DNA of 60,377 bases, filler included, from Sluysia triapertura (lineage: Eukaryota), in NCBI GenBank assembly GCA_046118255.1. It is 4 parts of 4 records of this genome, joined end to end, with 100 filler letters (N's around TTAATTAATTAA, not from the genome) between each part and the next. Parts side by side here need not be neighbours in the genome. Positions count along the whole stretch, not along the records: positions 46,342 to 60,377 come from JBJNIA010008656.1; 3 more parts are not named here. One strand, written 5' to 3'. The translations under genes and the position numbers were made by a program. Of the stretch, positions 1 through 60,377 are shown one piece after another; positions within the stretch are counted from its first letter, which is position 1, and every line of letters starts with the position of its first letter. The notes under the pieces were generated by a model. That model did not search any database, had not been told where the DNA came from, and was given only the letters and a program-made list of their open reading frames with translations.

Positions 1-1708
1 AAAAATAAAAAAATGACTAAACATTGCATAATAAATTATGCTTTTATTTTATTGAATCTAAATTCAGAAATAATTCTTACACATGAGTTATATTTTTGTA
101 GAATTAAACTTTTAAAATATAAACTTAATAATTTTAAGCATTTAAAATATAGTAATAAAATAAGGCGTTACAACTATTATTATGACAAATAAGTTTGTTT
201 AGAAATTTCAAATTGTATCATTTTTATTCTTGAAACTAATATATAAGTGAGTGTTCTGTTATACTTATTCATTTAGTATTCAAATCTAAAATTCATATTT
301 TGGGTCATTCTAAAAGCAAAAAATCATTCGTGACAAGGTCGTCTCCTTTTTCGAGCAAAAAATACCACTTTTGTAACAAATGAAGTATTTATAAATTCCG
401 AAATATTACCAAGTTTTACTCTTGTTCCATAAACATATCCACTTTTGACTTTTAACAATGTCGTTAATATCCGGTTTTTAAAACTTCCATCTAGTCGCAA
501 AAATCGACTGAAATTGGTAGGTCTACCACAACAGGACCACACAATTCATAGATGAACCACATTTAAACGAAAAACATCTACGATGAAATCGTAATCTATA
601 CTGACATAAAAATCATATTATAACTGTTGTATTTCCCCGAGAATGATTGCTACTTGGTACTCTTGCTGACGTATATTCGTCTAGGTAAAGACATTTATAG
701 TATTATAGTATGGAATGAAAATACTTACAAAAGTGCTGTGGTTTTTCTTAACTAATTGTGAGGATTATCATTGTGATAGAAATTATGATAACAATAAACA
801 CAACCAATGATAATTATAAACAATGGCTATGTTTATGTATTGAATGAATCGAGTAATTTGTTTAGCGTTTTTGTATGTAAGAAATGTTCATTTGTGATGA
901 AATGTATTGTGATATTGATATGAAAATGTGGAGTTATAACTTTATTAATCTTATGAATCGTTTTGTCTTGATTAGTGTGATGTCACTTTCATCATTCGAA
1001 AATACTTGATTAGTTACAATGAGGAAATAGTGGCTATTTTCATAATATTTTGTGCCTCCATAATACAGAATCTATTTATTTTTATATAAAGCAATGTGTG
1101 TGTTTCGTGGATGTGGGACATTAAGTTGTTTTATTTTTTCTAACAAATGATGCCGAATTGAAATTATACATGTTGCAAATGATAAATGCATAACTAAAAT
1201 TTTGTTTATAATTTACAATAATTGCGTGATTTATCCAAAATGATGATAATTTGACACATATCAATTTAAATGATTAAAACAAATGCAGGATTAATGATAA
1301 GATTAATTGTTAATTTGAAAGAAGTTGAGATATTCGGAATATGAATAATGTTCAACTAATTCCAGTTCGTATTAAAGTTAATAATCTTTTAAATAAAACT
1401 TTGAGGTTTTTTATTATAAATGTATATTTCATAAACGAACAAAAACATAATATCTGAAACCAAATTCATACAAATATTCTACGATGAATTAATTTTTTCA
1501 AAAGGTTCATTAAGCAATTTCGACAAAACAAATTCATAATAGAGTTCACAAAGAGTTTGTTAAACTTTTACTTTTTAGTAATTATTCTCATGTAGCTTCG
1601 ACTGCAGATAAATAATATTAAAAATGTTTTTAATTAATATGTTATAAATTCAGATTCGGAGAGAATGTTAATTAGTTTCTGAACACTTATCAAATGTTGT
1701 ATTAATAG

Positions 1709-1765
1709 TGTTAGACTTCATAAAATTGACTGACCGGGAATCGAACCTGGGCCCTCTAGCTGCTC
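1709..1765 (-). mobile_element. Partial copy (3' half) of the 98-bp tRNA-containing TGTTAGAC-bounded element
   Basis: Reads tgttagacttcataaaattgactgaccgggaatcgaacctgggccctc, the reverse complement of the T-arm/B-box, acceptor strand, T-run and terminus of the copies at 18476 and 57344. Confidence 0.75.
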
Positions 1766-2230
1766 ATTTTCGTTAAACATCACACAAACAATATATTTAT
1801 TTTATGCACTTGTATTCATTATTAGTGACCAGCACAGAAATCAACCATTTTTGAATCGTTACATAGACACATATGTGATAATAGAAAATACACTGGAGTA
1901 AGTTGTAAAAATAAAATAATAATTGAGCAATAATAAAACAAAGATAGTACTATAAAAAAACGATAATGATATAACAATGGAGTAATAATATAACACTGAT
2001 AATACGAATAAGATAACAACAATAATACGAGCAGCTGAGAAGAATAAAATGACAATAAAAGATGATAAAACAATAAAAAATGAGCTGGTCATAATAATAA
2101 TAACGTTATACTGTACTGTTCGAGATTTGAATTGATATGTGTGAGTATATAAAAATGTAGAAGGTAAAATAGTAGATAGTCGTAAATAAATTAATTGCTT
2201 TATATGTTGTTATTTAAGTTTAAATGATTG

Positions 2231-2515
2231 TGTTAGGTTGCCAACACAACCCTACAAAATAATTCTAAGGTGTTATAATGGCACATTAAAATTATTTAGA
2301 ACTTTTTAAAATCATGAAAAATTATTTAAAATCATAAAAAAATATTCCAAAATCATTTAAATTTAATTAAAAAACAATTATTTTCCAAAAAAGAAAGTTA
2401 TTTTTTCTAAAAAAGAATATTAGCTTCTATAAATAGTACAGAAGCATCGATTTTTATTGGATGATGACTAATATATAAATTAGCATCAATACAATGAAAA
2501 TCGCCATTTGCAATA
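2231..2515 (+). mobile_element. LTR-like dispersed repeat (solo LTR or fragment)
   Basis: Starts TGTTAGGTTGCCAACACAACCCTAC and contains atcgatttt...gatgacta-TATATAAA-ttagcat...aatcgccatttg. It is colinear with 57875-58090 and similar to 5410-5570 and 22000-22172 (-). The 3' end is not defined. Confidence 0.55.
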
Positions 2516-3031
2516 ATATCAGTTTTATATCAATATCAAGTGAAGAGAATTTTATCACATTCATAACAAAGCAGTTAACTGTTAACGCCATCCAAATCTA
2601 AACTAGTTAAAGGATATTGAAAAGATTCTTCATTTAGATTTTTGATCGACTACAATCCATGAAAAAGTAATTTGTTTTTGTTAGGATTGGTATTAGTTTT
2701 GCGTAAGGAAACTAATGTCGTAAACTACACGTAAAATCATATTCTGATAATCTTAGGGTTCCCCGATATATTGAGGGGTAAAATCCACTGTAAATTTATA
2801 ACCACTTTTTATTAAAGACTCAAAAGAGTTTTAACATTAAAATTCAGAATAAATTTTTAATTCTTAATTCTGTCATAACTTATCTATAATTTAATTGTTG
2901 TACATTTATTATTTAATTGTTTTCTGAAATAAAAACCCTGTTAGTTATTTGTGAATTTAATTAAATTAAATAGACCCTCCAATTATAAGATTATAAGTTT
3001 AAGTTACTGTATTTAGTTTAACTTATTTTGT

Positions 3032-3142
3032 TACAAAGGTGCCTTCTTTACGACATGATTTGCTTACTGTAACCGGATCCTGCTGAATTTTCTATTTTGC
3101 CGTAGGTTTATATTTAAATATCAATAAAAACCACAGCAATTG
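3032..3142 (+). repeat. Dispersed TIR-like repeat (family also at ~730-755, 6020-6100, 20057-20156, 21480-21560, 58221-58305)
   Basis: Shared motif ...actgtaaccgga.cctgct.aa...attttgccgtaggtt...aaaaaccacagca; several copies begin TA-CA(G/A). Confidence 0.55.
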
Positions 3143-3874
3143 CAAATAATTGTAATATGGTATTCTTGGTTCTGTTATTAGTCAAGGTTGCCCATTCTGA
3201 TCTAAAAATTGACTTACGTCCTTAGATTTTTAATTTATTTAATTGTTATTCACTAACTGATAATTGTGAAGTTTTCAAAAAACGTTTAATAGGAAAGGTG
3301 TAAATAAAATACCATAGAAATTGAGGGTCTGTGCATTTATGACCTATGTTAATAAAACTAAATCAGATCAATATAAATAAATTAATTAAATAACGTAATA
3401 ATATTTTATAGATTTCAATACAAACAAATTATTATTTTATTTACAACAATTATTCACATTTTTATGATATATTAAGTACTTATTACATCTTGTATATAAA
3501 ACGTTATATTATAAATGAAAACAACAATAAATTATAATTTATAATTTACATAAATAATAATTTATATTTCAAATTAATCTGTTTATTAATTCATTTTATA
3601 AGTTATTCTTACTTATTCTTTTATTCTTACTTTTTAAACATTATTTTAATAATTTATTAAATTTAATATTAATTAAATGTCCGCGATAAATCACTTTCAA
3701 CTCTTCCTGCCACATACCTGGTTTAGTCGTGCGCGCTTAACATTGAATAAGTTTAGATCCTTCTGATAGGTGAATAATTTATTGTTCAGAGTGAGTATCA
3801 CATTAAATTTGGATTTGGTTATGAAAGAGATCGTTCTGATCGTTTCAGTGTTTTATAGCGAATATTATATTAAA

Positions 3875-18475: not shown

Positions 18476-18573
18476 TGTTAGACGTCATAAAATGGACTGA
18501 CCGGTGATCGAACCCGGGACCTCTCACTGCGCAGTTTGATGCGCTACCACTGAGCTATCAGCCCCATCTAACA
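18476..18573 (-). mobile_element. Full-length 98-bp tRNA-containing element with TGTTAGA...TCTAACA termini
   Basis: Reverse complement: TGTTAGAT-GGGGCTGATAGCTCAGTGGTAGCGC...GAGGTCCCGGGTTCGATCACCGGTCAGTCCA-TTTT-ATGAC-GTCTAACA. It has an A box, a B box, a 7-bp acceptor stem GGGCTGA/TCAGTCC and a T4 terminator. Confidence 0.85.
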
Positions 18574-46341: not shown

Positions 46342-46417
46342 AGTGGTAGAGCAGTCGAACTGCGCAGCGATGGTCCCGGGTTCGATCCCCGGTCAGTCCA
46401 TTTTACGAAGTCTAACA
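46342..46417 (+). mobile_element. Copy of the 98-bp tRNA-containing element, 5' end lost in the gap
   Basis: Nearly identical to 57366-57441 (cagtcca vs tagtcca); ends GTCTAACA. Confidence 0.85.
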
Positions 46418-46499
46418 GATATATAGTTATGATTTATGAGTTAATTAACAGAAACATTTTTCTACTGAGATGCTATTCCTTTATCATTAATTCTGGCAC

Positions 46500-47400
46500 T
46501 ATTGTTATTTAAAGATTTGAATCATCTGGTAAATTTAAATCAATATCTGTGGATAAAATATGTATATCATACTTCAAAAAGTGTGGTGCATCGATTATCA
46601 TCTTGTGTAGAGGTTATATATAAATTTATTGATTCATTGACAACATGAACTTGGTCAAAAGTAACATCATTGGTTAACTGACATGGCAGTGAGTTACTAG
46701 TTAAGCGAACTATTTCTTTTTGGGCATTTTGTAATGTCACTGATAAATTACCATTTTCTTCCTGGAACATTTGAAGTGATTCTTCCTAACCAGAACTAGT
46801 AACGCAAGTTCTTTTGATAAGTTATTTTCGATGATTATGATTTTTTGACCATTCTTAACCGAATTATCATTGTTATTTTCATAACTTGAATTTTGAGTTG
46901 AAGTAGCTCCAGAATATTTCTGATTTAAAGAACAATTATTGCTGATATTACAGTTATAGTTATTGTTTTATTCATCTTTTTTAATTGGCTCAAAGTTTTT
47001 ATTTCATCACGATCTTGGTTCCGCTCTTGGCGAATTCTGAACCATCTTTCTCGCCATTTTGGTGTAGTATCACTCCACCGTTTTTTTATTTGATTTATGC
47101 GAAATTTAAGCTTTTCAAATTCTGATTTTCGTATAAATCGTAAATCGTTTATCGGTGGGATTTATATGGATTATTCTTATCTTCCGGATTATTTTGATTA
47201 TACGGTACTTTTAATGTTTTATTTGGATAGTATTGATCCTGATTAATAGGACAATTATGAAATTCGTGATTTTTATTCAGAAATAATTTCACAGGGATTG
47301 TTTTGTATCTGGTATATAATTGGAAAAAAAATAAATTCTTAATGATTACATAAATACGCAATATAAGCATATAATATTTCATGTATTGTTGAATTTATGC
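46500..47400 (-). pseudogene. Decayed ORF, possibly retroelement gag/ORF1-like
   Basis: A series of broken coding-like frames including NHEFHNCP (possible half zinc knuckle). Confidence 0.25.
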
Positions 47401-47843
47401 AAAGCACTATTATTCTAATTGTATTAATTGTATTAATTGTATTAGATCCCAGTATTTGCATCAAATTCAAATAATTGTAATACATATTTCGATAAATTCT
47501 TGTTACAATAAATTTTTTTTCTATGTAGAAAACATTTTTTATACAGTGTATTTACTACTATGTTACAATGACAAATGAATTTCTTTGGCCTGAAATCACA
47601 ATAATTATTTTTCTATCTGCATAAACATGGTAATGTATGTATGTGTATGTATTAAGTTGTCTTTGTTAGTATTCTTTTTCCATTAGTATTTTACTAAAAT
47701 CATATTTTCTTATTCTTTTGATGTCACCCTCTGACCTTTGATAAATAAGTGTAGCGAATTACATTCTATGTTTAATTTTTGGTTTAGAAATATTTAAGAT
47801 ATTGAGATTTTCACACAAAATTGATAACAGTATTTCATTTTAA

Positions 47844-47915
47844 CACATTATGAGCGGGTATTCTTAAGTGACAGTACATAAAACGGGTACTAATACCCGC
47901 CCCGCTCATAATGTG
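47844..47915. mobile_element. 72-bp piggyBac-type MITE
   Basis: TTAA-cacattatgagcggg ... cccgctcataatgtg-TTAA: perfect 15-bp TIR and TTAA duplication. Confidence 0.85.
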
Positions 47916-48042
47916 TTAATGTAAGCCAAATGATACATTTCAAGAAAAAAATATTAACTTTAATGATTTGAACATATGTCACAATAATTGGTACGTTTGT
48001 AATTTTCTCTTGAAAGCGTTTTAATTATACATTATTCTTTAA

Positions 48043-48399
48043 TCCTTTCAATACTGTAGGGACATATTGTCCCAGAGAATTTCTAATAATTACTAAAATA
48101 ATTTAAATGCTTACAAAAGCATTGGGATCTGGGATTTTAGTACTGTACGGTCATAGGGTCGTAAACAAGTCCAAACCTGTCTGTTTTGTTGCAGTTTGCT
48201 TTTTTTCTTTTCTATAAAATTGTCAATCTAGATGTTGCTAGCAAACAGCAGACACGTGTCACGCTTATTACTGTGTTTTTATATGTGCTGTGTTCGGAAT
48301 TGCCAAGTAAGCTATTTATAATTTTATTTTACTTACTTATTTAAATATTTTGTGCTATATTACATGAATTATTAAAATAAAAAAATCGTATTGAAAGGG
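48043..48399. mobile_element. piggyBac-type non-autonomous element
   Basis: TTAA-tcctttcaatac ... gtattgaaaggg-TTAA (CCC/GGG-type ends). Confidence 0.8.
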
Positions 48400-48606
48400 T
48401 TAATAAACATGTTTTGAATTTAATGCATTTCGAACATCAAAAACATTATTTTAAATCTTTACAAATAAGGCAATTCATTCATTCTGTATAGAAATTCTGA
48501 AATTAGCAATAGTTAAATTAAATTTGTTATATTCATATTTACGGTAACTGTTTTTGGAATTAAACGCTTAAAAATTAAGAAAAAGCATTAAATAGTTATT
48601 ACTTAC

Positions 48607-51600
48607 TTATACGCAGTAACCCAACCATCTTCAATTTCTTGCTTATTTTTATCCAATCTGCACAAATTATCTCTAAAAACTCTGGCACGTTCTGAAAAAT
48701 TAGGACAGTGAAGCCACGGTAACAAAAATAAATGACCCACGCTATCCCACATTAACTGCTTCACTTCCATTTGTTTACTGAAACTCATAACAAGTCCTGT
48801 ACAACCCAAGCGAGATAACATATACACTAATTGCAACCCTATAAAATGATTGGCTGGCGAATTGGCGAATGATTGTTGTGCAAATTGTAAAGCATTAATC
48901 AAATGCTTCCAATTTGATGGTTTTGTTGTATCCTTACACCAATAAGAATACCATATTGATATGGCAAGTCGCGCTAAATTGTCATAAAAATGAATTTCTG
49001 TTACTGATTCATTAGTATTATGTTCCGATTGATTAGAAACAACTAATCGATTATAAATTGCTTTTATATCTGATGGTGCAGTTAAACAATACCCATCAAT
49101 GGCACGATTTAACACTTCACGTAAATAAAATAATTCTACCGAATTTACATCAATGATTTCATCATGATTAATAGAATAATTAGAAAGAAATGTTTGTAAA
49201 AATTCTTTGCGTTCGGCTGGAGTAAAATAATCCATTTGAATAAATTTATACACGTCATAAATCAGACTCGATTTACCAATAAATTTTTTGATATATAACA
49301 AAAGTAAATCGCTTTTCGAAAGATTTTTGAGTACAGATGATGTCGAAGATTGATGTTGGATTTGTAACTTTAAATGTAATTGTAATAATTCAACATTAAG
49401 ATTATTTTTCGTAATTTCGGAATTTATTGAAGCTAATCTGAAAATTTAAATTTATATCTGGTCATTTAATTTCAAAATGTTAAAATTTTTCTTCCTTTAT
49501 TATTATTATTACTGTATTTTATTAAATTACATTCCTTCACCATAAAATAAACGCACTCTAAAATGAATTTATTTCTTAGATGTATAGTATAATCCGACTA
49601 TTCCAAATTCAGTAATTCTCAAAATTCTTTTAATACAAAAGAATCTTTTTAAACATATAGATTTCGGTTAATCCACAAATTTTTGTATCTATCCACTTGA
49701 AATTAACCAGTTTCTATTTTATATGGATTTTTGAAACGCTTTAAGTAGATTTTTTGTAGGGATTATATATATGCCTACAGAAAAAATCGCTGATTTTACT
49801 ATTAGTAGTTTTCACAAAATATAATTTTTAAATGTCAAAAAACATTGGAAAAAAAATTTTATGCAAAAATAAAAAACAAAAATTTAACATTAAGTAAAAA
49901 TCACCTTTACTTAAAACACGAAACAGTCTATTATTCATAGACCTGGGACAATCTCTAATGATTTCTTTATCCAAATGTTTTCACTCTTAACATTACTTTT
50001 TGTACATTAATTTTCGTCTTAGAATTGTTGGATAAAATTTTTTTCAATGTAATTTAGGTAATATCATCTATCAGATAATTAATAAAGTGGATATTATTAG
50101 TATTATCAGAAATTTGAGCATCTTGTTTTGTACAAAATTGATCATTTTTTATTACTTTTAGCACCAGTCCAAACCATGATTGAGCCAACTTCGGAACACA
50201 TACGATCATTTCGGATATACGTATGATTCATCCAGACAACATTGATTCTCATACATAAAACAATAAATAGATCAATTAGCACTTACGTTTATATACAAAA
50301 ATCTAAGCTGTCATTCATACAATATTTTGATAATGTCGTTAATTTTCTGTTTTACTTTTATATTTTAAGCCATTGAATCACTAGCTGGATACCTTAACCA
50401 AACTGCTTGATGTTCTTATTTTGATTAGCCCTAGTTACTCAGATACAATGATTAGCTCAAGTTCACATATTTTAAATAATCGAAATATGAAAAAATAGAC
50501 AGGCGAGGCATTAGGCGTACGTCTTAGTGTTTCACTTAAAAAATATACAAAATTGAAAGCAACAATCCTGCCATGAGTAACTAAATGAAGAAAAAGCATA
50601 TAAAATAGAATACTTATGTGCTTTTGAAAGGATATCAAAGTTTTGTTTTAATTTTTTAATTATTTGTCCGAGTCAATGAATTACATTTAGTATAAATTTA
50701 TCTGTAATTAATTTATTTCAAAATAACAAAGATAAGCATGTATAAGCATAATATATTTGACAGTTGTCATGAAAAAACGATGGCATCACCTTTATACCAA
50801 AAGTAAAACATCAATAAATCATGAGTTGGGTGATGCATTTATTACACTTTGGTCCCTTTAGGGTTAAAACTGTATTTTATGAAAAACAGAGTAAACTCAA
50901 CAATTTTTTTATTATGTATATAAATCTCTACTACCGTGATGCTCAACCTTTTTCTTGTCGCGGTATAATTTTAATTAAAAAAATTGGGCGGCACATTACC
51001 ATAAGAGTAAGATAAAATTAAAAGGAATACATAAGTTACGTACACACTTTAATCAACTACAAGACTAAGCAGAATACAGTATAAGCCGGCAGCTAAAACT
51101 GTAATAGTCATGTGCCTATGTATGAGTAATTGTGAAACGGCATAGTTATTGAGAATCTCTGCTCCAATCATAAAAACGTTTTCAAAATTAGTAATAGTAA
51201 ATTTCAGTTTGAATTTATCAATTATTTTTATTTCAATTTATCGAAATTTACATAATTTAAAAATTAAAAACTAACGAATGAAAATGAGAATCTTTATTTA
51301 ATAACGCAGCCAAATTAATATACTCTTTCCAAGTTCCTATATCATTAGGTCTGAATTAAATTTAATATTAAGCACTTCTTAAAAATATTTAGAGAAAGTT
51401 TATAATATAAATTATTTCATTTACGTGGCTTAACAATAAAATTATTACCGGATTAACAAATAATCATAATAAAGTTGTAAACATTCATCATTGCGTCCAA
51501 GACTCTTCAGTAAACCTAATTTTAAGTTAATTGCAGTTAATTTATTTTGGTCATTTTCTACTACATCTAAAAGTATGTAAATTAAAATATAAATTTACCT

Positions 51601-52328
51601 TTTAAAATATCGCTATTTAGCCACTCCAACGCTTCTTCGGTTTTATTCATTTTATTTAAAGTATATATTAAAAATTTAATTCTTTCCATCGATAATATCG
51701 AATTGTTGCTTTTAAACAGTTTTATAAGCATAGCTTCACCTAGTTTAATCAACCGTTCATCTTTGGATTCTATTCCATACAAGACATTGCTAACAATAGA
51801 CCACATAGAGTATTCTAGATGATTCGGGTTTAATTTTTTTAATAATGGAGCAATTTTTTGCTGGGAAATGAAATTTAAATTTTTAACATGACAGTAAAAT
51901 AAACTGGCACATAAATCTTCGCGATTTGGAAACTTTTTGTAAGCCTCTTCATACACTGTAGCTATCTTATCTCCTAACATAAAAAAATAAATTAAGAAAT
52001 TAATTAACTTTGATCAGTTTCGCGATAAAAATAAGATAATGCATTTAAAGTTGATTCATCTGTAGGACTTTCATTAAGTACGCTCTCAATTAAAACACAA
52101 CCTTCTTGATATTTATTCAATTTATATAATGAAAGTCCTTTTAATACTTTGGCAGGTAACAGGTTTGGATTTTTCTTTAAGACTTTATCGGCTTCTGCTG
52201 CAGCCTTCTTATAATTGGCAGCTTCAATTTGATCTAAAAAATAACTAATAAGTATATTTTTTACCAAATATTCCTTTTAATCGTCTTTCATTAACTTCAA
52301 TTTGACTTAATGCTGCTTTTGAACTCAT
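48607..52328 (-). CDS. NAA25: N-alpha-acetyltransferase 25, NatB auxiliary subunit (MDM20); 5' six exons
   Basis: Exons 52328-52265, 52233-52009, 51973-51599, 51566-51449, 51350-51276 and 49437-48607 are all GT-AG and phase-consistent (about 562 codons). Motifs: NERRLKGIFDQIEAANYKKAAAEADKVLKKNP...AKVLKGL, PTDESTLNAL, SPANHFIGLQL...EVKQLMWDSVGHL. The C-terminal exons were not found. Confidence 0.92.
49900..50260 (-). mobile_element. Tc1-like transposase remnant in a NAA25 intron
   Basis: Broken frames GSIMVWTG (cf. Tc1 GSVMVWG) and SMNNRLFRVLSKG (cf. Tc1 C-terminal SMP.R...VI..KG). Confidence 0.5.
50934..51161. mobile_element. hAT-type MITE (degenerate)
   Basis: c(c)gtgatgctcaaccttttt ... 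ttgagaatctctg resembles hAT CAGTG.T.CTCAA ends; the 8-bp TSD is poorly preserved. Confidence 0.45.
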
Positions 52329-52921
52329 GAAATAATATATTTTTTCAAAAAAATATAAAGGAAATTTTTAATTACTTAAAATAATTATATTTTGTATTTA
52401 TGGAATATAAAATAGTGTGATTGATTTATTGTAAAACTATATAATTTGATACAAATTCAATATAGTTTATTATTATATTATAATTATTATTCACTAACAC
52501 TGATATGATTATATATAAAATTAAATTTTGATTTATTTTTATTAAATTTTATTAAGCAAAAACAATTTTTATAATTAATTTTAGAAAAACACATGTCATT
52601 ATTTAAATCATGTATTTCTGAATAAAGAAACAAATATTGTTCTTTAATATGAATCATTTAACGTAATAATTTAACGTAATAAAATATTAAAGTATCTAAT
52701 ATGATAATTTCATTGCTAATATATTAATTTTTTACTTTTTTATTATTTGGTATTACAATTACTGTATTGCAAATATTTTCAGAATTATATTGAATTACCT
52801 CATAATTCATTTAGTCATAAATTTTAAGAATGTATCTTAAGTGGAATTAAATATTTATCTTTCAAAGAATTTAATGCTAACTAACTTAAGCAAATAGTAA
52901 CAATAATAAATGTCATTTTAA
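52329..52921. promoter_or_regulatory. Putative bidirectional promoter NAA25/DUF1330-like gene
   Basis: Divergent start codons 593 bp apart. Confidence 0.5.
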
Positions 52922-53357
52922 ATGGCAGAACGACATATTGATTGCGATGGTGAATGCTATCTTATTTGTCACTTTAAAGAAGGAGATGCATATACATACA
53001 GAAACAGCTTAATTCGACAAATGACTGTGCTGGAAAGAAACTTTTGTGGTCGTGAAGCAATATTTTGTCCTAAAATGCAACCAATTGAATCTAATTCGGC
53101 TAGTAATTTCGGAATTGGAATAATACATTTTCCAGACTTTGCTACTGCTAAGGTACAATGTTATTATTTTAATTATTTTACAAAAGTTATGGTATGAGTC
53201 AGCTCATGAAATAAGGCAGCCAGATTGGTTAAACAGTGCTACATTATTATTAGTTCCAAGTAGAAATGATGTTGAATTACACATGCCAATTGTCGAATTT
53301 GCAGAATGGAATTACTTTCGAGATGTTTATAGATTTCAAAATGAATATTTATCAACG
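52922..53357 (+). CDS. DUF1330-like (dimeric alpha-beta barrel) protein, first two exons
   Basis: Exons 52922-53152 and 53187-53357 (34-nt intron) join to GIIHFPDFATAK-LWYES, like the DUF1330 FP....A..WY.S motif. Donor ACG|GTAAGA; downstream exons not found. Confidence 0.7.
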
Positions 53358-53406
53358 GTAAGATTATTTTTATAAATAAAATTTAAGAAAAGTTTGTCTA
53401 GCAGAT

Positions 53407-53445
53407 CAGTGGTTCTCAAAGCATATAAATTAGTGGACCACTCTA
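53407..53445 (+). mobile_element. hAT-family terminal sequence
   Basis: CAGTGGTTCTCAAA...gtggaccac; the opposite end was not located. Confidence 0.45.
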
Positions 53446-55659
53446 TTAATATAAGCGAAACAGTATATCATCTACACAAAAAGAAATAACTTATCGATTA
53501 AGTTATCTTAATTTTTAAATATTTTTAAAAATTTTAAATATTTAAAAATATAAATTTAAATATATTTTAATAGAAAATAGACATCATAAAGCAATAATGT
53601 CGAACCTTAAAAAATATTTGTAGTTTAACAAAAATGCTTTCAATACACTTCAATAAATGTAGCTTTTAAATCTTGAAAACTGAATACAAACTATCTATTT
53701 TCTAACTGCGGATCCCAATATGAACAGAATATATACGTTAAAATATTTTTGAGAAGAGTCTGACTACAATATACGACTTATGACGAGAAGTGGACGTATA
53801 TGTAACTAAAATTGACAATAATCAATATAAAATCACTTAATTTCTTAAACTTCTACAATTTCTCTGTGTATGTTGATTAGATGGTCCGTTTTTTTAAATT
53901 TTAATCACCTTACTTTGTCAAATTGTTAAAAAACGTTTTATGCTAAGACTGGCAGTGTTATGCCTTCCATGGGAACAATTGATAGAAGTTCCTCTGAAAT
54001 TTGAAAATCTTCCGTAATAGTCCTAATGAAAATTAACGACTAAGCTGTATCTTTTAAATCACAACTTTCGTCCAGAGTTGTGATTTTAAATTATCAAACG
54101 TAATTCAAACTTAAAATTATAATATAATCAAAATAGAACTTATCATTCATGTTTCAAAATTAATTAACATTAAAACTTTAGATGAAAATGTAACTTAAAC
54201 TTTGGGGAGTGTCTACTCAAAACTTTGTGAAAAATAATAACTTAATGAAAATACAATAAACTTATAAATTTTCTTATATCAAAATGGTACGTGTCTGATC
54301 ATGTAATCTACTAAATATTACGTTATCTACATTATACACTGGAATTAACCTAATATAGTTCAATCGAGTAACTGTTGACTGTATGTGTGTTAATGACAGA
54401 TAAAATATGTGTGAGGAGCCTGCTGATTGGGTACTCAATCAAAGTGTAACATCATAACTGAATTTGATTGAGTGCCCAATCACAAGAGTAATACTAGTAT
54501 GCTGGTTCACAATGCATACTTGTCACCATTAAGCTTATAAACTAACAAAGATGGTAATTAAAAATTGTGACAGGTAGATATAATTTAGTTAAATAAATAG
54601 TTACCATGTCATATGGTTAATTGTTGGTATTGATAGTTATAATAGCAAAAATAATTAAGATTAAATAAGACCAAAATAAAATAATGATAATAATAAATTA
54701 ACTGAAACTTAAATTCCTTTCTTTATGCTCAAAACATGATCTTTCTATTTATTTTATATTTCTTTCTTTAAATATATTTGAAATCCTTGAAATTATATTT
54801 ATAAAAAATTTTGATTCAAATGTTAGGAACTGATTGATACTAAAATATTTAAGAGATGTTACTTTGATTATGTCAAAAAATGGTTTCGAAGTGTTAATTT
54901 AATGTTTTCAATAATATTAATGATTGAATGGTGAGGATTATGAATTTGAGATATTTTAAATAAACTTTGAATTTTAAATTGATGGTTTTAAATGTAATTG
55001 TACTTCTGACGTTCTGAATTATGGGTTGAAATGTTTTAAATAAAATTTAATGTACGTTAATGATCTGAAAGTGAATGTAATTTTAATGTTATAAAGTATG
55101 AAATAAAAATGTTTGAGAAATTTGTAATAAGGTTTTTTAGAAGTAAAGGAGATTTAGATGTAAGAGTATTTAAAATGATATTAGATTTTATGTTTGACGA
55201 TATTAAGCGTTGTGAAGAATGATTTCGTTATGTCAAGAAAAAAATAAAATTGTTAAAGTAATAGGTTGGACACCACATGCATAACATTAGCACAATTTAA
55301 TGTAAGTTTTTTATTCTCAAATTTCTTTAAACAAGAATTAATTTAACATGAAATTTAATTGTTTCCATTTCATATCACCATAAATTACTTATCTGACTAA
55401 GTACAATTTTCAAGTTATTAGTAATCGGTCATTGAAATTGGAATTTAAAATTGCGAAATTATTTATAAAGTATTATTTAGTTTAACGTGTGATTTTAACT
55501 CAGAAGTTACTTTTGAGTTTTCTACTAAAATATTGTTATGAATTTAAGTCAGATTTTAAGACCGTGCAAAACAAGGTCGAAAACTTAACAGTAAAAGCTT
55601 ACTTAATATACTAAAATCGCTGATCGAAAATAGTCTGCCGATTTCCAAAATCACTTGTT

Positions 55660-55800
55660 CCAAACCAAATAAAGTCGAAACCAAATAAAATCGAACCGAA
55701 TAAAACCGAACCGAATAAAACCAAATAATTGAAAACCAAATAATCGAAAACCGAATAATTGAAAACCAGATAGTTGAAAACCAAATAATTGAAAACCAAC
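55660..55800. repeat. 14-15-bp minisatellite (aaaacc(g/a)aataat(t/c)g)n
   Basis: About 9 degenerate units seen directly. Confidence 0.9.
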
Positions 55801-55950
55801 TATACTTCTAAAATTATTCTCTTGTCGTCTTTTATAACTTTCAGATTTGGCTTATTACTCTGTCTCTATATAAATTGTCGCAAATTAACTTTTTACTCTG
55901 TCTTTAATTGTTACGCTAGGTCTTTTTATACCTTTTTTCTTTTGTAGATC

Positions 55951-56126
55951 AATTATTTACAATCAATATTAATATTGTTTATAATCCGTTTTCCGTTTTA
56001 AATATTATAAATTATTATTTACAATTAATATTGTTTATAATCCGTTTTCCGTTTTAAATATTATAAATTATTATTTACAATCAATATTAATATTGTTTAT
56101 AATCCGTTTTCCGTTTTAAATATTAA
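55951..56126. repeat. Three tandem copies of a ~60-bp unit
   Basis: aatattgtttataatccgttttccgttttaaatatta occurs three times. Confidence 0.9.
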
Positions 56127-57343
56127 TTTATTCGTTACGATAGATAAATATAATACTTTGTTTTATTCCAATATCCTTTTGTAATTATTTGTTTATAAAA
56201 TTTGAAAAAATGAATAATTTTTATAAACTAATTTTAATTGTGTACTAATTAAATTTGAAACTAAGCTAAATTTTATTAATTTTTTAAAATTAAAATTTTC
56301 TTTTTTATAAAACTAATATTATTTTTATACAAATATTATTGAAATTATTTACAAATTTACTAACACATATTGACACATATTTACATAATAATAGTAGTCA
56401 ATATTTTCACCTGAGTAATTATTTTGGAGTAAGAATGGGCCTTAAGCTCATTTTATAATGTCGCTTTTGATGACACTATTCTAAGAAATAGAACGGTTCT
56501 TAAGCCCATATTTTATATTACTATTTTTGAAGACGTAATTTAAAAAAGTAGAATAATTATGCAATTTAAACGTCTAAAGTTATTTAGGCCATCACAAAGA
56601 ACTCAGAATCGTTAGAAAAAAAATAAAAGAATAGATCTTAAGTAACAATCAATTTAAAAAATTTGTAATACAGTAATAACATAGAAGTTTCGTAAAAACA
56701 TTAACAGATAATTTATCAATTTAATAATTTTCTAAATATCACAAAGATACGTCGTGGTTCCACCAGCTTAAATGGTAAACCGTAGGTGAATTCTATGTTC
56801 ATTTTGTAAGTTTAAGTAAAAGATATTAAAAAAACTTGCAGTAGCATTAGCTATTTTGACAATATTTTTCTCGACATACTGGCGTGAGTCTGTATTTACA
56901 ATAAATTTTATTAAATCGACTCAGAAGAAAATATTTCTGTAGTGAGTCATAACTCTAAAGGATACATTTGCAAACAATAACGCGCTTTAAACATAAACAT
57001 TAAATTATTACATTTTTCCACCCGTATACACTCATATTACAATAATCTCTTACTGAATTTGCATACATCATATTTCAATAAAAGAAAACTAATTTCTGCA
57101 AAACTTATTGATATTCTCGTACCATTATAATTCTATTCTAAAATATTCATACCCAATCTTATTATAACTTCTTCTCTGCTGACGAATTAAGTGGGACCAC
57201 AAACTTTGTATGTTAACAATTTATCAAACGGCTTCAAGTAACTTAGTAAAATTTAATGAAAGTTTTGTAATAATAATAATAATGTTGGGGTAAAAGGCCT
57301 AAAAAGTGCCAAGTAGTAAAATTGAATATATTGAAAATGAAAT

Positions 57344-57441
57344 TGTTAGACGGGTCTGATAGCTCAGTGGTAGAGCAGTCGAACTGCGCAGCGATGGTCC
57401 CGGGTTCGATCCCCGGTTAGTCCATTTTACGAAGTCTAACA
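57344..57441 (+). mobile_element. Full-length 98-bp tRNA-containing element with perfect 8-bp terminal inverted repeats
   Basis: TGTTAGAC-GGGTCTGATAGCTCAGTGGTAGAGC-AGTCGAACTGCGCAGCGATGGTC-CCGGGTTCGATCCCCGG-TTAGTCCA-TTTT-ACGAA-GTCTAACA. D and T arms resemble tRNA-Ala; the anticodon arm is non-canonical. Confidence 0.88.
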
Positions 57442-57471
57442 ATATTAATACATGTTTTTTAATCACTGAAA

Positions 57472-57512
57472 TGTGCAGTGAGAGGTCCCGAGTTCAATCC
57501 TCGGTCAGTCAA
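57472..57512 (+). mobile_element. Partial second copy of the tRNA-like core
   Basis: tgtgcagtgagaggtcccgagttcaatcctcggtcagtc. Confidence 0.65.
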
Positions 57513-57874
57513 TATACACTCATAATTTTAATCAAAGTAAAAGTTTAATCAAATAAAACAAACATCGTTATAACTATGAAGTCGAATCTGTTAAAATATT
57601 TTTATTTATGATAAGCAAAATTTAGTAATATTTGAACATTTTTCTATAACTTGCACTGTACTATTCGAATACTAACCAAACGCTTTAATACGGTTTTCAT
57701 ATAAATCATGATGATAAACAATTGGTTGACTGTTCCAATCGATTACTATCAAATATAATCGTCAAGATATCAAGGTTACACAAACTTCAGAATGATAAAG
57801 CTTACCAAAATGAAACTTCGGCACTTACACCTTCTTCAATAATGCAATAGACTCGATAATCGCCATTTTTAGTA

Positions 57875-58090
57875 TGTTAGGTTGTCATCACAACCCTATA
57901 AAATAATTTAAAATATCATAACACTTTAAAATTATTTAAAATCGTTAAAAATTCAATTAAAATCATTTAAAAATCTTATTTTCGAAAAAAGAAAATTCGT
58001 TTCTAAACATAGAACATTCCATCGATTTTCAATGGTTGATGATTAGTACATAAACTAGCATGAATTTAATGAGAATCGCCATTTTGTAAA
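57875..58090 (+). mobile_element. LTR-like dispersed repeat
   Basis: TGTTAGGTTGTCATCACAACCCTAT... colinear with 2231-2515. Confidence 0.55.
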
Positions 58091-58220
58091 CCCACTGTGG
58101 GAGGGCTTTTTATTTTTTATAATTAGTAAATTAAAAGTTATATGATAAGTTATCAAAATTTTATCATTTGAGCATTTATTTAAAACATTTAAATTCAGAT
58201 AAAATATTAGTTTATATAGT

Positions 58221-58305
58221 TACAGAAACGCCCTTTTCACGACACAAGGCGTGTACTGTAACCAACCCTGCTCAAAAAAACATTTTGCCGTAGGTTAAGT
58301 GTTGG
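58221..58305 (+). repeat. Copy of the dispersed TIR-like repeat
   Basis: TA-CAGAAACGCCC...actgtaaccaaccctgctcaaaaaaacattttgccgtaggtta. Confidence 0.55.
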
Positions 58306-58984
58306 AAAGTAACAAGTATAAGCCAATCTAGTTGTACAATTCAAACTTGACCTAATCATAATGAACTGGTTCCACCATCCACAAAATTTAATTGAAGCCT
58401 TGAAGACAATATAAATCTTATGCAAGTTTAAGTAAATTCTTCAGTTTCTTAAAGGCCAGTTTCTAACCGAGCTGTATAAAACAAATTTATCATTGTTATG
58501 ATTCCTAGAATCATTAACTTGTTTCATCAAATAATATTCGCATCGATGCACATGGTATTGGATGTATTGATTTTGATTCATTGGTTGCGTTAGTATTATT
58601 AATTCTTATTCTGTTTACAACATTCCGTAATTTTCTATTGATTAATAAACAAGATTCAATGCTTGTATAGATTATATCTTAAAATAAAATTTTCTTTTAA
58701 TAAAGATTAAGCACAATATTGGCTTAAAATTGAAACAAAAAGCTTTTGATTATAAAAAAAATAACAAAAAAGATAATGAAAATAATAAACAATTGTATTA
58801 AAGTAATAAAAATAATAATAAAAATTAATAATAATCAAAATTTTAAATTCAGACTGGGTTAGTATCTTGAGGTGGTAGATGTTATGAAGATTGTGTAAGG
58901 ATGTGAAAATGTAATAATTAATGATTTGATGTATATTGTTGATGTTATGAGTTTGTTTGCGAACGTATTATTGTTTATGAATTC

Positions 58985-59280
58985 ATGTTTTAGGGTTTTG
59001 ACTCAACAAAAACTTTGAGTTTGGAAAAGGACTGACAATGAACAAATTTATTGTTTTGAATAATTTTGTTTTATTTTTACGAGTGTTATATAAGAAAGTT
59101 TTTCCAATATATATGGATATTTTTGCTGCACATAAGTACAGGTTTGGTCTTATGTGCTGATGATGTAGAAGTGCGATTAAGTAACGCACAACGTTTACAG
59201 TAGTGCCTTATACAACTTATGAAACCAAAGAAGCATATCTTAAGTGAATCAAAATAAATGATCGAATGCGAAATAGACAT
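58985..59280 (-). mobile_element. Possible decayed gypsy/Ginger integrase remnant
   Basis: Overlapping broken frames IRHYCKRCAL (cf. integrase Zn-finger V..Y.K.C..C) followed by ISIYIG...RKNK...INLF...PFPN (cf. start of the catalytic core). Confidence 0.3.
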
Positions 59281-59717
59281 TGAGTGAAATCTTAACTACT
59301 TTTACGAAAGAATTTTTATCGTGTTTAACAGAATGATGTTGCTCCATCAGATAACCTTGCGGCACCTTTAAGTGCATAAAGAAATAAAGTAGTAGTATCT
59401 CCGGTACTAAGGTACAATTAATATAAAAATGTCTGCCTTTTGCGACGTAACCGTAATTAGTAGCATAATATTAAAAACTTATTAATAAAGGAATTTTTAA
59501 TACAATATAACACTAAGTGACTAATAAGTACGTAAGAAAGTTACATAGATTCGTAGTCTTGATTTTGTACTACAATTACTATTAATATTGACAGTTAAAA
59601 CTCTCTCTCATTCTACAATATATTCTTTATACGACTTTCAAATTGGATCCTTTAATTTATATCAATTCACTGAAAAGTTGTAAAGAAGATAATAAGAATA
59701 GTAATAACCTAATAATA

Positions 59718-59719
59718 AC

Positions 59720-59766
<47 letters not shown>
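59718..59766. repeat. (AAT)n microsatellite
   Basis: Seen directly. Confidence 0.95.
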
Positions 59767-59768
<2 letters not shown>

Positions 59769-60029
59769 TCGTATGAAACTTTTGTGGTGTTGTGATAGTT
59801 TTTAAATTTTTATACTTATATTATTTATACTTTAAGTTATATTCTTGTATTTCAAATTGTATTTTAGGTAAGCTATCATAATAATTCATGAAATAGTTAT
59901 TTTTATATATAAAAAGCTTTTGACTTTATAAAATTTATTATAAATTTTATTGATATGGTGTAAAATATAATGATAGAATATTTTCAGTATACCTTTTAAT
60001 CTTATATAATTTTTATAATTAAACTTCAG

Positions 60030-60207
60030 TTACGTGAAATTAGGAAAATGTAACACCGAATTACCGTCAATAAGCAATGTGCATCCATTTAATATATATG
60101 ATTTATCAGGAATTTTCATTTTGATTTCAATCGGTGTGGTTTTGTCATTCCCAATTGCACTTATCGAATTTGGAATTAAAAGAGCTAAACTTTCTCATCA
60201 AAAGACT
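60030..60207 (+). CDS. Ionotropic glutamate receptor family exon (end of S2 plus M4 helix)
   Basis: cttcAG acceptor, ACT|GTATGT donor; GKC...PFNIYDLSGIFILISIGVVLSFPIALIEF matches the iGluR C...L....GvF..L..G..l...iAliEF signature. Confidence 0.8.
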
Positions 60208-60377
60208 GTATGTATATATTTAGTATTTAATATATTGTAAATACGTATTTGAAATTAAAAATATAGCTCAAATTAATTGTACAATTTGTAATTTATTTAA
60301 ATTTAATTATACAAAATAAAAATAACCAATTGTTAATCAATCTAAGAAACTAAAATTTAAAGGTTTATATATATATA

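What the first reader, a model, noticed from the sequence alone, without database searches (positions are those of the whole stretch)
57344..57441. 98-bp mobile unit: a tRNA-like Pol III cassette sealed between TGTTAGAC/GTCTAACA termini
Seen: two complete copies (57344-57441 +, 18476-18573 -) are both exactly 98 bp, and four partial copies exist (1709, 45443, 46342, 57472). The full copies have A and B boxes, a pairing acceptor stem and T arm, a TTTT terminator and a non-canonical anticodon arm. The inverted termini lie outside the predicted Pol III transcript, there is no poly(A) or simple-repeat tail, and the 4-bp flanks match 3 of 4 (aaat/atat; atat/attt). Known: SINEs begin at the tRNA 5' end and have tails, whereas TG...CA ends with short TSDs mark LTRs and Ginger transposons; plant Cassandra TRIMs carry a 5S Pol III unit in their LTRs. 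Inference: this could be a tRNA analogue of Cassandra (mini solo-LTR) or a tRNA-carrying Ginger MITE, i.e. an integrase-mobilised Pol III/TFIIIC module at high copy.
Basis: partly seen in the sequence, partly recalled or inferred. Interest (0 to 1): 0.8.

Follow-up and report, generated by a model that had tools for sequence, protein, structure and literature searches.

The report
tRNA-carrying LTR-like repeat, hugely abundant
The 98-bp unit is real, but it is the core of a 159-bp non-coding repeat present perhaps 100,000 times in this AT-rich animal genome; its layout matches the LTRs of 'Helenus' mini-retrotransposons described in 2024, so it is probably an unusually abundant member of a known kind.

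Summary
TGTTAGAC (57344-57351) and GTCTAACA (57434-57441) bracket a tRNA-like gene (57353-57424) with A and B boxes, a 6-nt anticodon loop and a TTTT run. A second copy (46342-46417) is cut by the piece's edge.

The unit size is wrong for most copies. Contigs of the one public run that holds this genome show summed depth of 1.2-2.1 million over 57283-57441, against about 15-18 in the flanks. The right edge at 57441 is sharp. The commonest unit is therefore 159 bp, starting TGTTGGGG and ending TCTAACA.

This layout is a short upstream part, a tRNA-derived Pol III module, a T-run, about 13 nt and a final ACA. It is the layout of published Helenus LTRs (Kojima 2024, TRIMp3, the tRNA twin of Cassandra; 4-bp target duplications in animals). 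One contig shows two units 34 nt apart, and the spacer begins GTTGG and ends purine-rich.

My best reading is a Helenus-like LTR, present here as solo LTRs (0.5). The main rival is a Ginger2-type MITE (0.27), because the left end matches a published Ginger2 MITE terminus at 12 of 16 bases. An ordinary SINE is unlikely. Target duplications, paired copies and expression could not be tested.

The parts
57283..57441 (+). Commonest form of the repeat unit (159 bp), TGTTGGGG...GTCTAACA. Read as an LTR of a Helenus-like TRIM, here a solo copy.
   Evidence: Summed contig depth is 0.9-2.1 million across this span against 15-18 outside. It drops about 1000-fold after 57441. The bin 57270-57283 holds about 1/14 of the next bins. 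The joint 57441->57283 names both ends.
57283..57298 (+). Outer left terminus TGTTGGGGTAAAAGGC (TGTNR type): the integrase or transposase end.
   Evidence: It is 12/16 identical to the published Ginger2_NA MITE terminus. Only 2 of 28,041 16-mers in the piece reach 12/16, and this one sits exactly on the family boundary. Structural variants (skips 57303/57304->57356) keep the first ~20 nt.
57299..57343 (+). AT-rich upstream part (U3-like). A TATA-like hexamer lies at 57317-57322 in most copies, and the 3' end is purine-rich.
   Evidence: Nearly all other copies read T at 57319, giving TATAAT about 31-36 nt before the tRNA start (table 3). This is the most variable part of the unit: 57301 deletion, 57319, 57331, 57333, 57343. 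9 of 13 bases in 57331-57343 are purines. The promoter role is inference.
57344..57351 (+). Inner 8-mer TGTTAGAC, the perfect inverted partner of 57434-57441.
   Evidence: No variant at 5% or more in 57345-57351. Two contigs join a right end directly to 57343/57344.
57353..57424 (+). tRNA-derived (Ala|Arg-like) pseudo-tRNA with A box 57360-57370 and B box 57403-57413. Predicted Pol III/TFIIIC module.
   Evidence: Rfam RF00005 at 45.8 bits. ARAGORN gives a 6-nt anticodon loop. Most copies read G at 57355 and C at 57418, which gives a fully paired acceptor stem with G3.U70. The D arm/A box and T arm/B box show no variant at 5% or more, while the anticodon arm does (57378, 57382, 57391, 57395).
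57425..57441 (+). T4 run plus a 13-nt tail ending GTCTAACA (U5-like, the right terminus).
   Evidence: Same right boundary in both copies of the piece. 148 contigs run on into unrelated AT-rich DNA after 57441. Published Helenus LTRs have a T-run followed by 11-24 nt ending ...TACA.
57279..57282 (.). Left 4-bp flank ATAA, candidate target-site duplication with 57442-57445 ATAT.
   Evidence: 3 of 4 match. Not significant in 75% A+T DNA. (TAA)n lies next to it.
57442..57445 (.). Right 4-bp flank ATAT.
   Evidence: The consensus of right flanks in 148 contigs begins TATATATT.
57467..57518 (+). Diverged 3'-half copy (anticodon arm to acceptor 3' strand), about 25 nt downstream of the full unit.
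   Evidence: 85% identity of 57484-57510 to 57396-57422. Depth of 600-3,600 over 57452-57521, and 'goes back' joints in other contigs, show that the arrangement 'unit + spacer + half unit' is itself repeated, roughly 10^2 times.
46342..46417 (+). Second copy, with its left 22 nt or more cut off by the piece's edge. Same right end. No TGG primer site after it.
   Evidence: 76 nt at 99% identity to 57366-57441. Flank GATATATAG.... No TGG within 12 nt.

Best explanation
The stretch is one copy of a very abundant non-coding interspersed repeat. There are at least several thousand diverged copies, and roughly 10^5 copy-equivalents by depth. The usual unit is 159 bp (57283-57441). I read it as a long terminal repeat of a Helenus-type terminal-repeat retrotransposon in miniature (TRIMp3), present here as solo LTRs.

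The parts read as follows. U3 is about 57283-57344 and carries a TATA-like hexamer. R is the tRNA-derived module, whose A and B boxes recruit TFIIIC and Pol III; transcription would start a few nt before 57353 and stop at T4 (57425-57428). U5 is the last 13 nt. A read-through Pol III RNA (R-U5-primer site-purine tract-U3-R, under 300 nt) would be copied by the reverse transcriptase of an autonomous Gypsy-type element. Its integrase, which needs TGT...ACA ends, would insert the copy with a 4-bp duplication in AT-rich (TATA-like) targets. LTR-LTR recombination would then leave solo LTRs.

Shown: the ends, the abundance, the tRNA module and the layout. Inferred: transcription, the U3/R/U5 borders, the retro-copying step and the partner element.
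For: (1) Family boundaries are at 57283 and 57441, with TGTTG... and ...TAACA ends and no tail on either side.
(2) The layout is the same as the published Helenus LTR consensus sequences: TGT.., then 10-60 nt, then a tRNA-like part with A and B boxes, then T4-6, then 11-24 nt ending ...TACA. Examples are the 104-bp Helenus-2_TeGr, Helenus-1_LAn and Helenus-1_LiLo. LTRs there are 104-323 bp, internal parts go down to 43 bp, and animal families give 4-bp duplications.
(3) One contig has two units in the same direction 34 nt apart. The spacer begins GTTGG (Helenus internals begin (T)TGG) and its last 20 nt are 17 purines. Only 0.14% of 20-mers in the piece reach that count. 159+34+159 = 352 bp lies inside the Helenus size range of 311-1263 bp.
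(4) The two ends share only TGTT plus one more base, as LTR ends typically do and MITE ends usually do not.
(5) The A-box and B-box regions are the least variable parts across about 10^4 contigs. Kojima reports the same conservation for Helenus.
(6) The pseudo-tRNA cannot decode, as in most Helenus families.
Against: No LTR-internal-LTR copy is in the piece. Neither copy is followed by a TGG primer site or preceded by a clear purine tract. Among the joints that were shown, only one contig pairs two units, its 'primer site' TGGATAATCG matches no tRNA 3' end that I know, and no paired form appears at high depth. Both copies here are young (0-2% from the majority letters) yet single, and a copy number near 10^5 is about 20 times the largest published Helenus family (5,575 LTRs). 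The left terminus also matches a Ginger2 MITE terminus. The 4-bp flanks match only 3 of 4.
Confidence: 0.5

Rival explanations
1. It is a Ginger2-type MITE. On this reading the 159-bp unit (and a 98-bp short form that uses the inner TGTTAGAC as an alternative left end) is a non-autonomous cut-and-paste DNA transposon. An integrase-like Ginger2 transposase moves it in trans into RTATAY targets with 4-bp duplications, and the tRNA-like gene is captured cargo.
For: The left terminus TGTTGGGGTAAAAGGC is 12/16 identical to the Ginger2_NA MITE terminus TGTTACGGTAAAAGTA of Bombyx, Rhodnius and Mengenilla, and it sits exactly at the boundary found independently from depth. The GTAAAA motif is mirrored near the right end. 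Both ends follow TGTNR, and Ginger2 gives 4-bp duplications at RTATAY. The consensus of right flanks begins TATAT. The copies seen are single units, near-identical and extremely numerous, as expected of a MITE burst. The short form has a perfect 8-bp inverted repeat.
Against: Gypsy-type Helenus LTRs start with much the same motif (TGTAACGG.., TGTGACGGGTAGG), so the terminal match does not separate the two models. Bao et al. say Ginger termini resemble those of Gypsy LTRs. The inverted repeat of the long form is only 4-5 contiguous bases. A MITE model gives no reason for the order 'tRNA module, T-run, short tail'. The purine-rich 34-nt spacer between two units fits a TRIM better. No transposase was found, but only 14 kb could be searched.
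Confidence: 0.27
2. It is an ordinary tRNA-derived SINE, copied from a Pol III transcript by a LINE reverse transcriptase.
For: It is tRNA-derived with intact A and B boxes and a very high copy number.
Against: Family sequence extends about 70 bp upstream of the tRNA start, beyond any internal-promoter transcript. A T4 run follows the tRNA at once. The right end is a fixed ...GTCTAACA with no A-rich or simple-repeat tail. The (TAA)n at the left is not shared by the family: depth falls to about 10^3 and then about 10^2 within 30 nt.
Confidence: 0.04
3. It is another kind of repeat, or a mixed one. Examples are a dispersed satellite-like unit, a member of another TGT...ACA transposon superfamily, or a solo-LTR-like unit spread mainly by segmental or tandem duplication.
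For: Tandem and partial arrangements exist: joints with 1-34 nt between units, and a 'unit + spacer + half unit' form at roughly 10^2 copies. Contigs cannot show whether the high-depth fraction is dispersed or arrayed.
Against: 148 or more contigs leave the right end into unrelated AT-rich DNA, and no joint has high depth. Both copies in the piece lie in unique DNA beside genes.
Confidence: 0.12

Closest known systems
Helenus (TRIMp3), TRIMs with a tRNA-derived sequence in their LTRs (Kojima 2024, PMC10886601)
   Same: TGT...ACA ends. The LTR layout is a short U3, then a tRNA-like part with conserved A and B boxes, then a T-run, then a short tail. The pseudo-tRNA cannot decode. The unit length of 159 bp falls within the published 104-323 bp. 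Targets are AT-rich with 4-bp-type flanks, as in animal families. Tandem and partial arrays occur.
   Different: No paired LTRs with a primer site and purine tract were seen in the piece. The possible internal part (34 nt) would be shorter than any published one (43 nt). Copy number is about 20 times the largest published family. The ends start TGTTG/TGTTA rather than TGTAG/TGTAAC. The anticodon arm is unrelated to those of the published families I compared.
Ginger2 non-autonomous elements (Ginger2_NA MITEs; Zhang et al. 2013, PMC3845634; Bao et al. 2010, PMC2836005)
   Same: TGTNR termini. 12/16 identity of the left terminus, including GGTAAAAG. AT-rich TATA-like flanks and the expected 4-bp duplication. 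Small and non-coding.
   Different: Published MITEs are 531-651 bp with 16-bp inverted repeats, 40 to just over 120 copies (Table 1 of Zhang et al.) and no tRNA-like part. Here the long form has only a 4-5-bp terminal inverted repeat.
Cassandra (plant TRIM with a 5S rRNA-derived Pol III promoter in its LTRs)
   Same: A Pol III gene-derived promoter and terminator sit inside an LTR. It also forms tandem arrays (titles and abstracts; discussion).
   Different: Cassandra carries a 5S module, not a tRNA module. It is found in plants, is 565-860 bp long and always has a primer site and purine tract.
tRNA-derived SINEs (SINE2)
   Same: A tRNA-derived head with A and B boxes, and high copy number. 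Kojima proposes that Helenus arose when a SINE2 inserted into a TRIM LTR.
   Different: SINEs start at the Pol III start site and end in a tail. This unit has about 70 bp upstream, an immediate T-run, fixed TGT...ACA ends and no tail.

Membership tests
Helenus / TRIMp3 | tRNA-derived sequence with conserved A and B boxes inside the repeat unit (LTR) | tested here: met
   Rfam tRNA at 45.8 bits. A box 57360-57370 and B box 57403-57413. Both are invariant at the 5% level across the laid contigs.
Helenus / TRIMp3 | LTR termini 5'-TG...CA-3' with a short terminal inverted repeat | tested here: met
   TGTTG...TAACA for the 159-bp form. TGTTAGAC/GTCTAACA for the 98-bp core.
Helenus / TRIMp3 | Two LTRs flanking a short internal part that begins with a tRNA primer-binding site and ends with a polypurine tract | tested here: inconclusive
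   Not present in the piece: both copies are single, with no TGG after them. One contig of run X1 has two units 34 nt apart, with a spacer that begins GTTGG and ends with 17/20 purines.
Helenus / TRIMp3 | 4-bp target-site duplication (animal families) | tested here: inconclusive
   ATAA against ATAT, 3 of 4, in 75% A+T DNA. Only one copy has both flanks.
Helenus / TRIMp3 | An autonomous Gypsy partner sharing the primer site or ends | not testable with these tools
   Only 14 kb of this genome is available. Collection scans found nothing.
Ginger2 non-autonomous transposon (MITE) | Terminal inverted repeats starting TGTNR | tested here: inconclusive
   TGTTG and TGTTA are at the ends. The long form's repeat is only 4-5 contiguous bases plus a shifted GTAAAA motif. 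The short form has 8 bases. The left end is 12/16 identical to Ginger2_NA.
Ginger2 non-autonomous transposon (MITE) | 4-bp duplication at RTATAY targets | tested here: inconclusive
   The right-flank consensus begins TATAT, but agreement is only 0.43. The copy's own flanks are ATAA/ATAT.
Ginger2 non-autonomous transposon (MITE) | An autonomous element with an integrase-like DDE transposase and the same ends | not testable with these tools
   No such reading frame appears among the open stretches of the piece. The rest of the genome is not available.
tRNA-derived SINE | The element starts at the Pol III start site next to the tRNA 5' end | tested here: not met
   Family depth continues 70 bp upstream of 57353, to 57283.
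tRNA-derived SINE | 3' tail (A-rich or simple repeat) copied by a LINE partner | tested here: not met
   Fixed end ...GTCTAACA in both copies, then unrelated DNA.

The most novel reading that the evidence does not exclude
A unit built like a Helenus LTR moves on its own as DNA. It would be a solo-LTR-like MITE cut and pasted by a Ginger2-type (integrase-like) transposase, which would explain single, near-identical copies in the order of 10^5. That would link TRIM LTRs and Ginger MITEs directly. It would also mean that a DNA transposon has seeded the genome with about 10^5 complete Pol III/TFIIIC modules (TATA-like hexamer, A and B boxes, terminator) whose RNA keeps the alanine identity pair G3.U70.
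Probability: 0.2. Interest if true: 0.7.

Novelty: new member of a known kind. Interest (0 to 1): 0.42.

Why it matters
If the Helenus reading holds, this is by far the most abundant family of that recently defined group, with possibly the smallest internal part. It sits in a fast-evolving AT-rich animal lineage whose proteins are barely represented in public data: the nearest relative of its NAA25 exon is 35% identical.

Practically, tRNA finders will call tens of thousands of false tRNA genes in this genome, and the repeat may break assemblies, since the piece starts inside a copy.

Biologically, tens of thousands of intact A/B-box modules are potential TFIIIC/Pol III binding sites. Such sites can act as boundaries or perturb neighbouring genes. 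The family would also be a good case for asking whether Pol III-driven TRIMs or integrase-type MITEs can reach SINE-like copy numbers.

Tried and rejected
(1) I tried to collect more copies from public collections with exact-pattern scans of three conserved stretches. Metagenome contigs (twice), viral contigs (twice) and prokaryote genome contigs (twice) gave no match. This was expected for a eukaryotic repeat.

(2) I looked for spurious reading frames through the repeat in the protein collection, to fetch more loci. No candidate was found.

(3) I tried to identify the organism.
- The NAA25 exon found no homologue in the length-limited search.
- The exhaustive search gave 7 weak hits. The best was 35% identical, from an unrelated 49% G+C contig. 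The best named hits were Limulus and Biomphalaria at 23-26% identity.
- The organism is therefore an animal, but the lineage is unresolved. Run and organism names were coded.

(4) There was no RNA run, so expression could not be tested.

(6) Literature searches for the element's own sequence strings found nothing relevant.

(7) Folding the 98 nt as RNA and the 159 nt as DNA gave nothing beyond the terminal 8-bp stem, with z-scores of -1.0 and -2.0.

(8) I considered that the 61-nt left arm might be the internal part of a TRIM with 98-bp LTRs. I rejected this for most copies. Left-arm depth is 0.8-1.0 of the core depth, not 0.5, and no direct 57441->57283 joint is reported. Contigs could miss such a joint.

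(9) I considered that the two same-direction copies 11 kb apart might be the LTRs of one element. I rejected this because a host gene (NAA25) lies between them.

(10) The 34-nt spacer is not significantly similar to the left arm (p about 0.09).

Full report
**What is in the sequence.** The piece (46342-60377) is about 25% G+C eukaryotic DNA.
- At 57344-57441 the + strand reads TGTTAGAC, a 72-nt tRNA-like gene (57353-57424), TTTTACGAA and GTCTAACA.
- The two 8-mers are exact reverse complements. The chance of this for a random pair is about 8e-5 at this base composition.
- Rfam's tRNA model scores 45.8 bits against a gathering score of 29.
- ARAGORN draws a cloverleaf with good D and T arms but a 6-nt anticodon loop, and labels it tRNA-?(Ala|Arg).
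- The A box (57360-57370) and B box (57403-57413) fit their consensus sequences. Four T follow the discriminator base.
- A second copy at 46342-46417 is 99% identical over 76 nt and ends at the same ...GTCTAACA. Its left part is cut off by the edge of the piece.
- A diverged 3'-half copy lies at about 57467-57518.

**How large and how frequent the unit really is.** Only one public run (X1, kept as Logan contigs, organism coded) holds this genome. I laid its contigs on 57200-57600 and 9,920 were placed.
- Summed depth is 14.8 on the left and about 18 on the right. It is 0.9-2.1 million across 57284-57441.
- Taken at face value this is of the order of 10^5 copy-equivalents. The tool warns that summed contig depth is not a copy number, so I claim only 'thousands of diverged copies plus a much larger near-identical fraction'.
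- The right edge is sharp. Depth falls about 1000-fold after 57441, and 148 contigs continue into unrelated AT-rich DNA (agreement 0.43).
- The left edge is not at 57344. High depth runs to 57283, and the bin 57270-57283 holds about one fourteenth of the next bins, as expected if only its last base belongs to the family.
- One contig joins 57441 back to 57283.
- The two most frequent left 'loose ends' (57334 and 57340) have upstream consensus letters that are recognisably diverged versions of 57311-57339. They are long-form copies that the aligner clipped.
- Evidence for a free 98-bp form inside my data is thin: two single-copy contigs.
- There is no tail on either side. The (TAA)n left of 57283 is not shared by the family.

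**Variation within the family (table 3).**
- Nearly all other copies read T at 57319, G at 57355 and C at 57418.
- With G at 57355 and C at 57418 the acceptor stem is fully paired and has the G3.U70 wobble pair. This copy has lost it.
- No variant reaches 5% in the D arm/A box, the T arm/B box, the inner 8-mer or the last 23 nt.
- The upstream arm and the anticodon arm do vary.
- Rarer structural variants join the first ~20 nt directly to the tRNA part (skips 57303/57304->57356). The outer left terminus and the tRNA module are therefore the conserved pieces.

**What it is not.** It is not an ordinary SINE. About 70 bp of family sequence lies upstream of any possible internal-promoter start site, the T-run follows the tRNA at once, and the end is fixed and tail-less. 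It is not a working tRNA gene, because of the 6-nt anticodon loop. The two copies 11 kb apart are not the LTRs of one element, because a host gene lies between them: NAA25/NatB auxiliary subunit, Pfam PF09797, E = 4.6e-20.

**Comparison with known kinds: Ginger.** Both ends follow the TGTNR rule that Bao et al. give for Ginger1, Ginger2 and Gypsy LTRs. Ginger2 makes 4-bp duplications at RTATAY. The outer left terminus TGTTGGGGTAAAAGGC is 12/16 identical to the terminus TGTTACGGTAAAAGTA of the Ginger2_NA MITEs of Bombyx, Rhodnius and Mengenilla. Only 2 of 28,041 16-mers in the piece reach that score, and this one sits exactly on the boundary found from depth. That first made me favour a Ginger2 MITE.

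**Comparison with known kinds: Helenus.** A later search found Kojima 2024 (PMC10886601), which describes Helenus. These are TRIMs whose LTRs carry a tRNA-like sequence, named as the twin of Cassandra and grouped with it as TRIMp3.
- Animal Helenus families make 4-bp duplications and are thought to be moved by Gypsy elements.
- Their LTRs are 104-323 bp, and their internal parts go down to 43 bp.
- The deposited consensus LTRs all have one layout: TGT.., then 10-60 nt, then the tRNA-like part, then a run of 4-6 T, then 11-24 nt ending ...TACA.
- The 159-bp unit here is that same layout with a longer upstream part.
- Several Helenus LTRs start TGTAACGG or TGTGACGGGTAGG. The match to the Ginger2 terminus therefore does not separate the two models, because integrase-type enzymes use similar ends.
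- Helenus internal parts begin (T)TGG (primer site) and end purine-rich.
- The one contig with two units in tandem has a 34-nt spacer that begins GTTGG and whose last 20 nt hold 17 purines. Only 0.14% of 20-mers in the piece reach this.
- 159+34+159 = 352 bp lies inside the Helenus size range.

**Weighing the two models.**
- For the LTR reading: the layout, the weak terminal inverted repeat of the long form, the spacer contig, and the conserved promoter boxes.
- Against it: both copies in the piece are single, young and lack a primer site or purine tract. No paired form appears at high depth (though contigs may miss it). The copy number is about 20 times the largest published Helenus family.
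- Those same points favour a MITE.
- I put the Helenus-like LTR at 0.5, a Ginger2-type MITE at 0.27, other or mixed at 0.12 and SINE at 0.04.
The concept, however, is already published.

**Likely mechanism (inferred).** TFIIIC binds the A and B boxes. Pol III starts a few nt before 57353, close to the inner TGTTAGAC. Most transcripts stop at T4, giving a tRNA-like RNA of about 80 nt that cannot decode. Rare read-through RNAs running from one LTR into the next would be the template for a Gypsy reverse transcriptase. The integrase would insert the DNA at AT-rich sites. The right-flank consensus begins TATAT, and this copy's flanks are ATAA/ATAT. The 8-bp complementarity between the start of R and the end of U5 would close a stem around the tRNA-like part just before the primer site. 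Folding gives that stem but no significant extra stability.

**Limits.**
- The genome outside this 14-kb piece, RNA data and repeat libraries (Dfam, Repbase) were not available.
- All scans of public collections were empty.
- The organism is an animal with fast-evolving proteins. Its NAA25 exon is at best 35% identical to anything among 1.8 billion representatives, and the best named hits are Limulus and Biomphalaria. The lineage is unresolved.
- I applied the three majority letters to this copy only to test the tRNA fold, before the LTR reading arose. I give no family consensus.

Noticed in passing
window 48606-52276 (- strand): Exons of an NAA25/NatB auxiliary-subunit gene (Pfam NatB_MDM20, E = 4.6e-20). 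It is unusually divergent: E = 0.02 to human NAA25, and the best match among 1.8 billion representatives is 35% identical. Introns are short.
   Followed up: partly
window 57442-57521: The DNA right of the unit (a ~25-nt spacer plus a diverged 3'-half copy) is itself repeated, with depth 600-3,600 against 18. Other contigs show the same 'unit + spacer + half unit' order, so a longer composite subfamily of roughly 10^2 copies exists.
   Followed up: partly
window 46342: The piece begins inside a copy of the repeat, at the position equivalent to 57366. This fits an assembly that breaks in this family.
   Followed up: no
window 55663-55799: A tandem array with a 15-bp period (AAAACCAAATAATTG-like, about 9 units).
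   Followed up: no
window 55952-56125: A 56-bp tandem repeat in 2.9 copies. It contains its own 28-nt inverted repeat, TTACAATCAATATTAATATTGTTTATAA.
   Followed up: no
window 57263-57282 and 59689-59766: (TAA)n/(ATA)n microsatellites. The first abuts the left end of the repeat unit and may have erased its target duplication.
   Followed up: no
window 57378 and 57395: In other copies 57378 is often T (56%) and 57395 sometimes A (20%). These two places face each other at the base of the anticodon stem, so G.T here may be replaced by T-A elsewhere. Linkage between the two variants could not be checked.
   Followed up: no
window 52922-53375 (+ strand): Two open stretches (91 and 83 aa) diverge from the NAA25 start. 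They have no Pfam match and are possibly a lineage-specific gene.
   Followed up: partly
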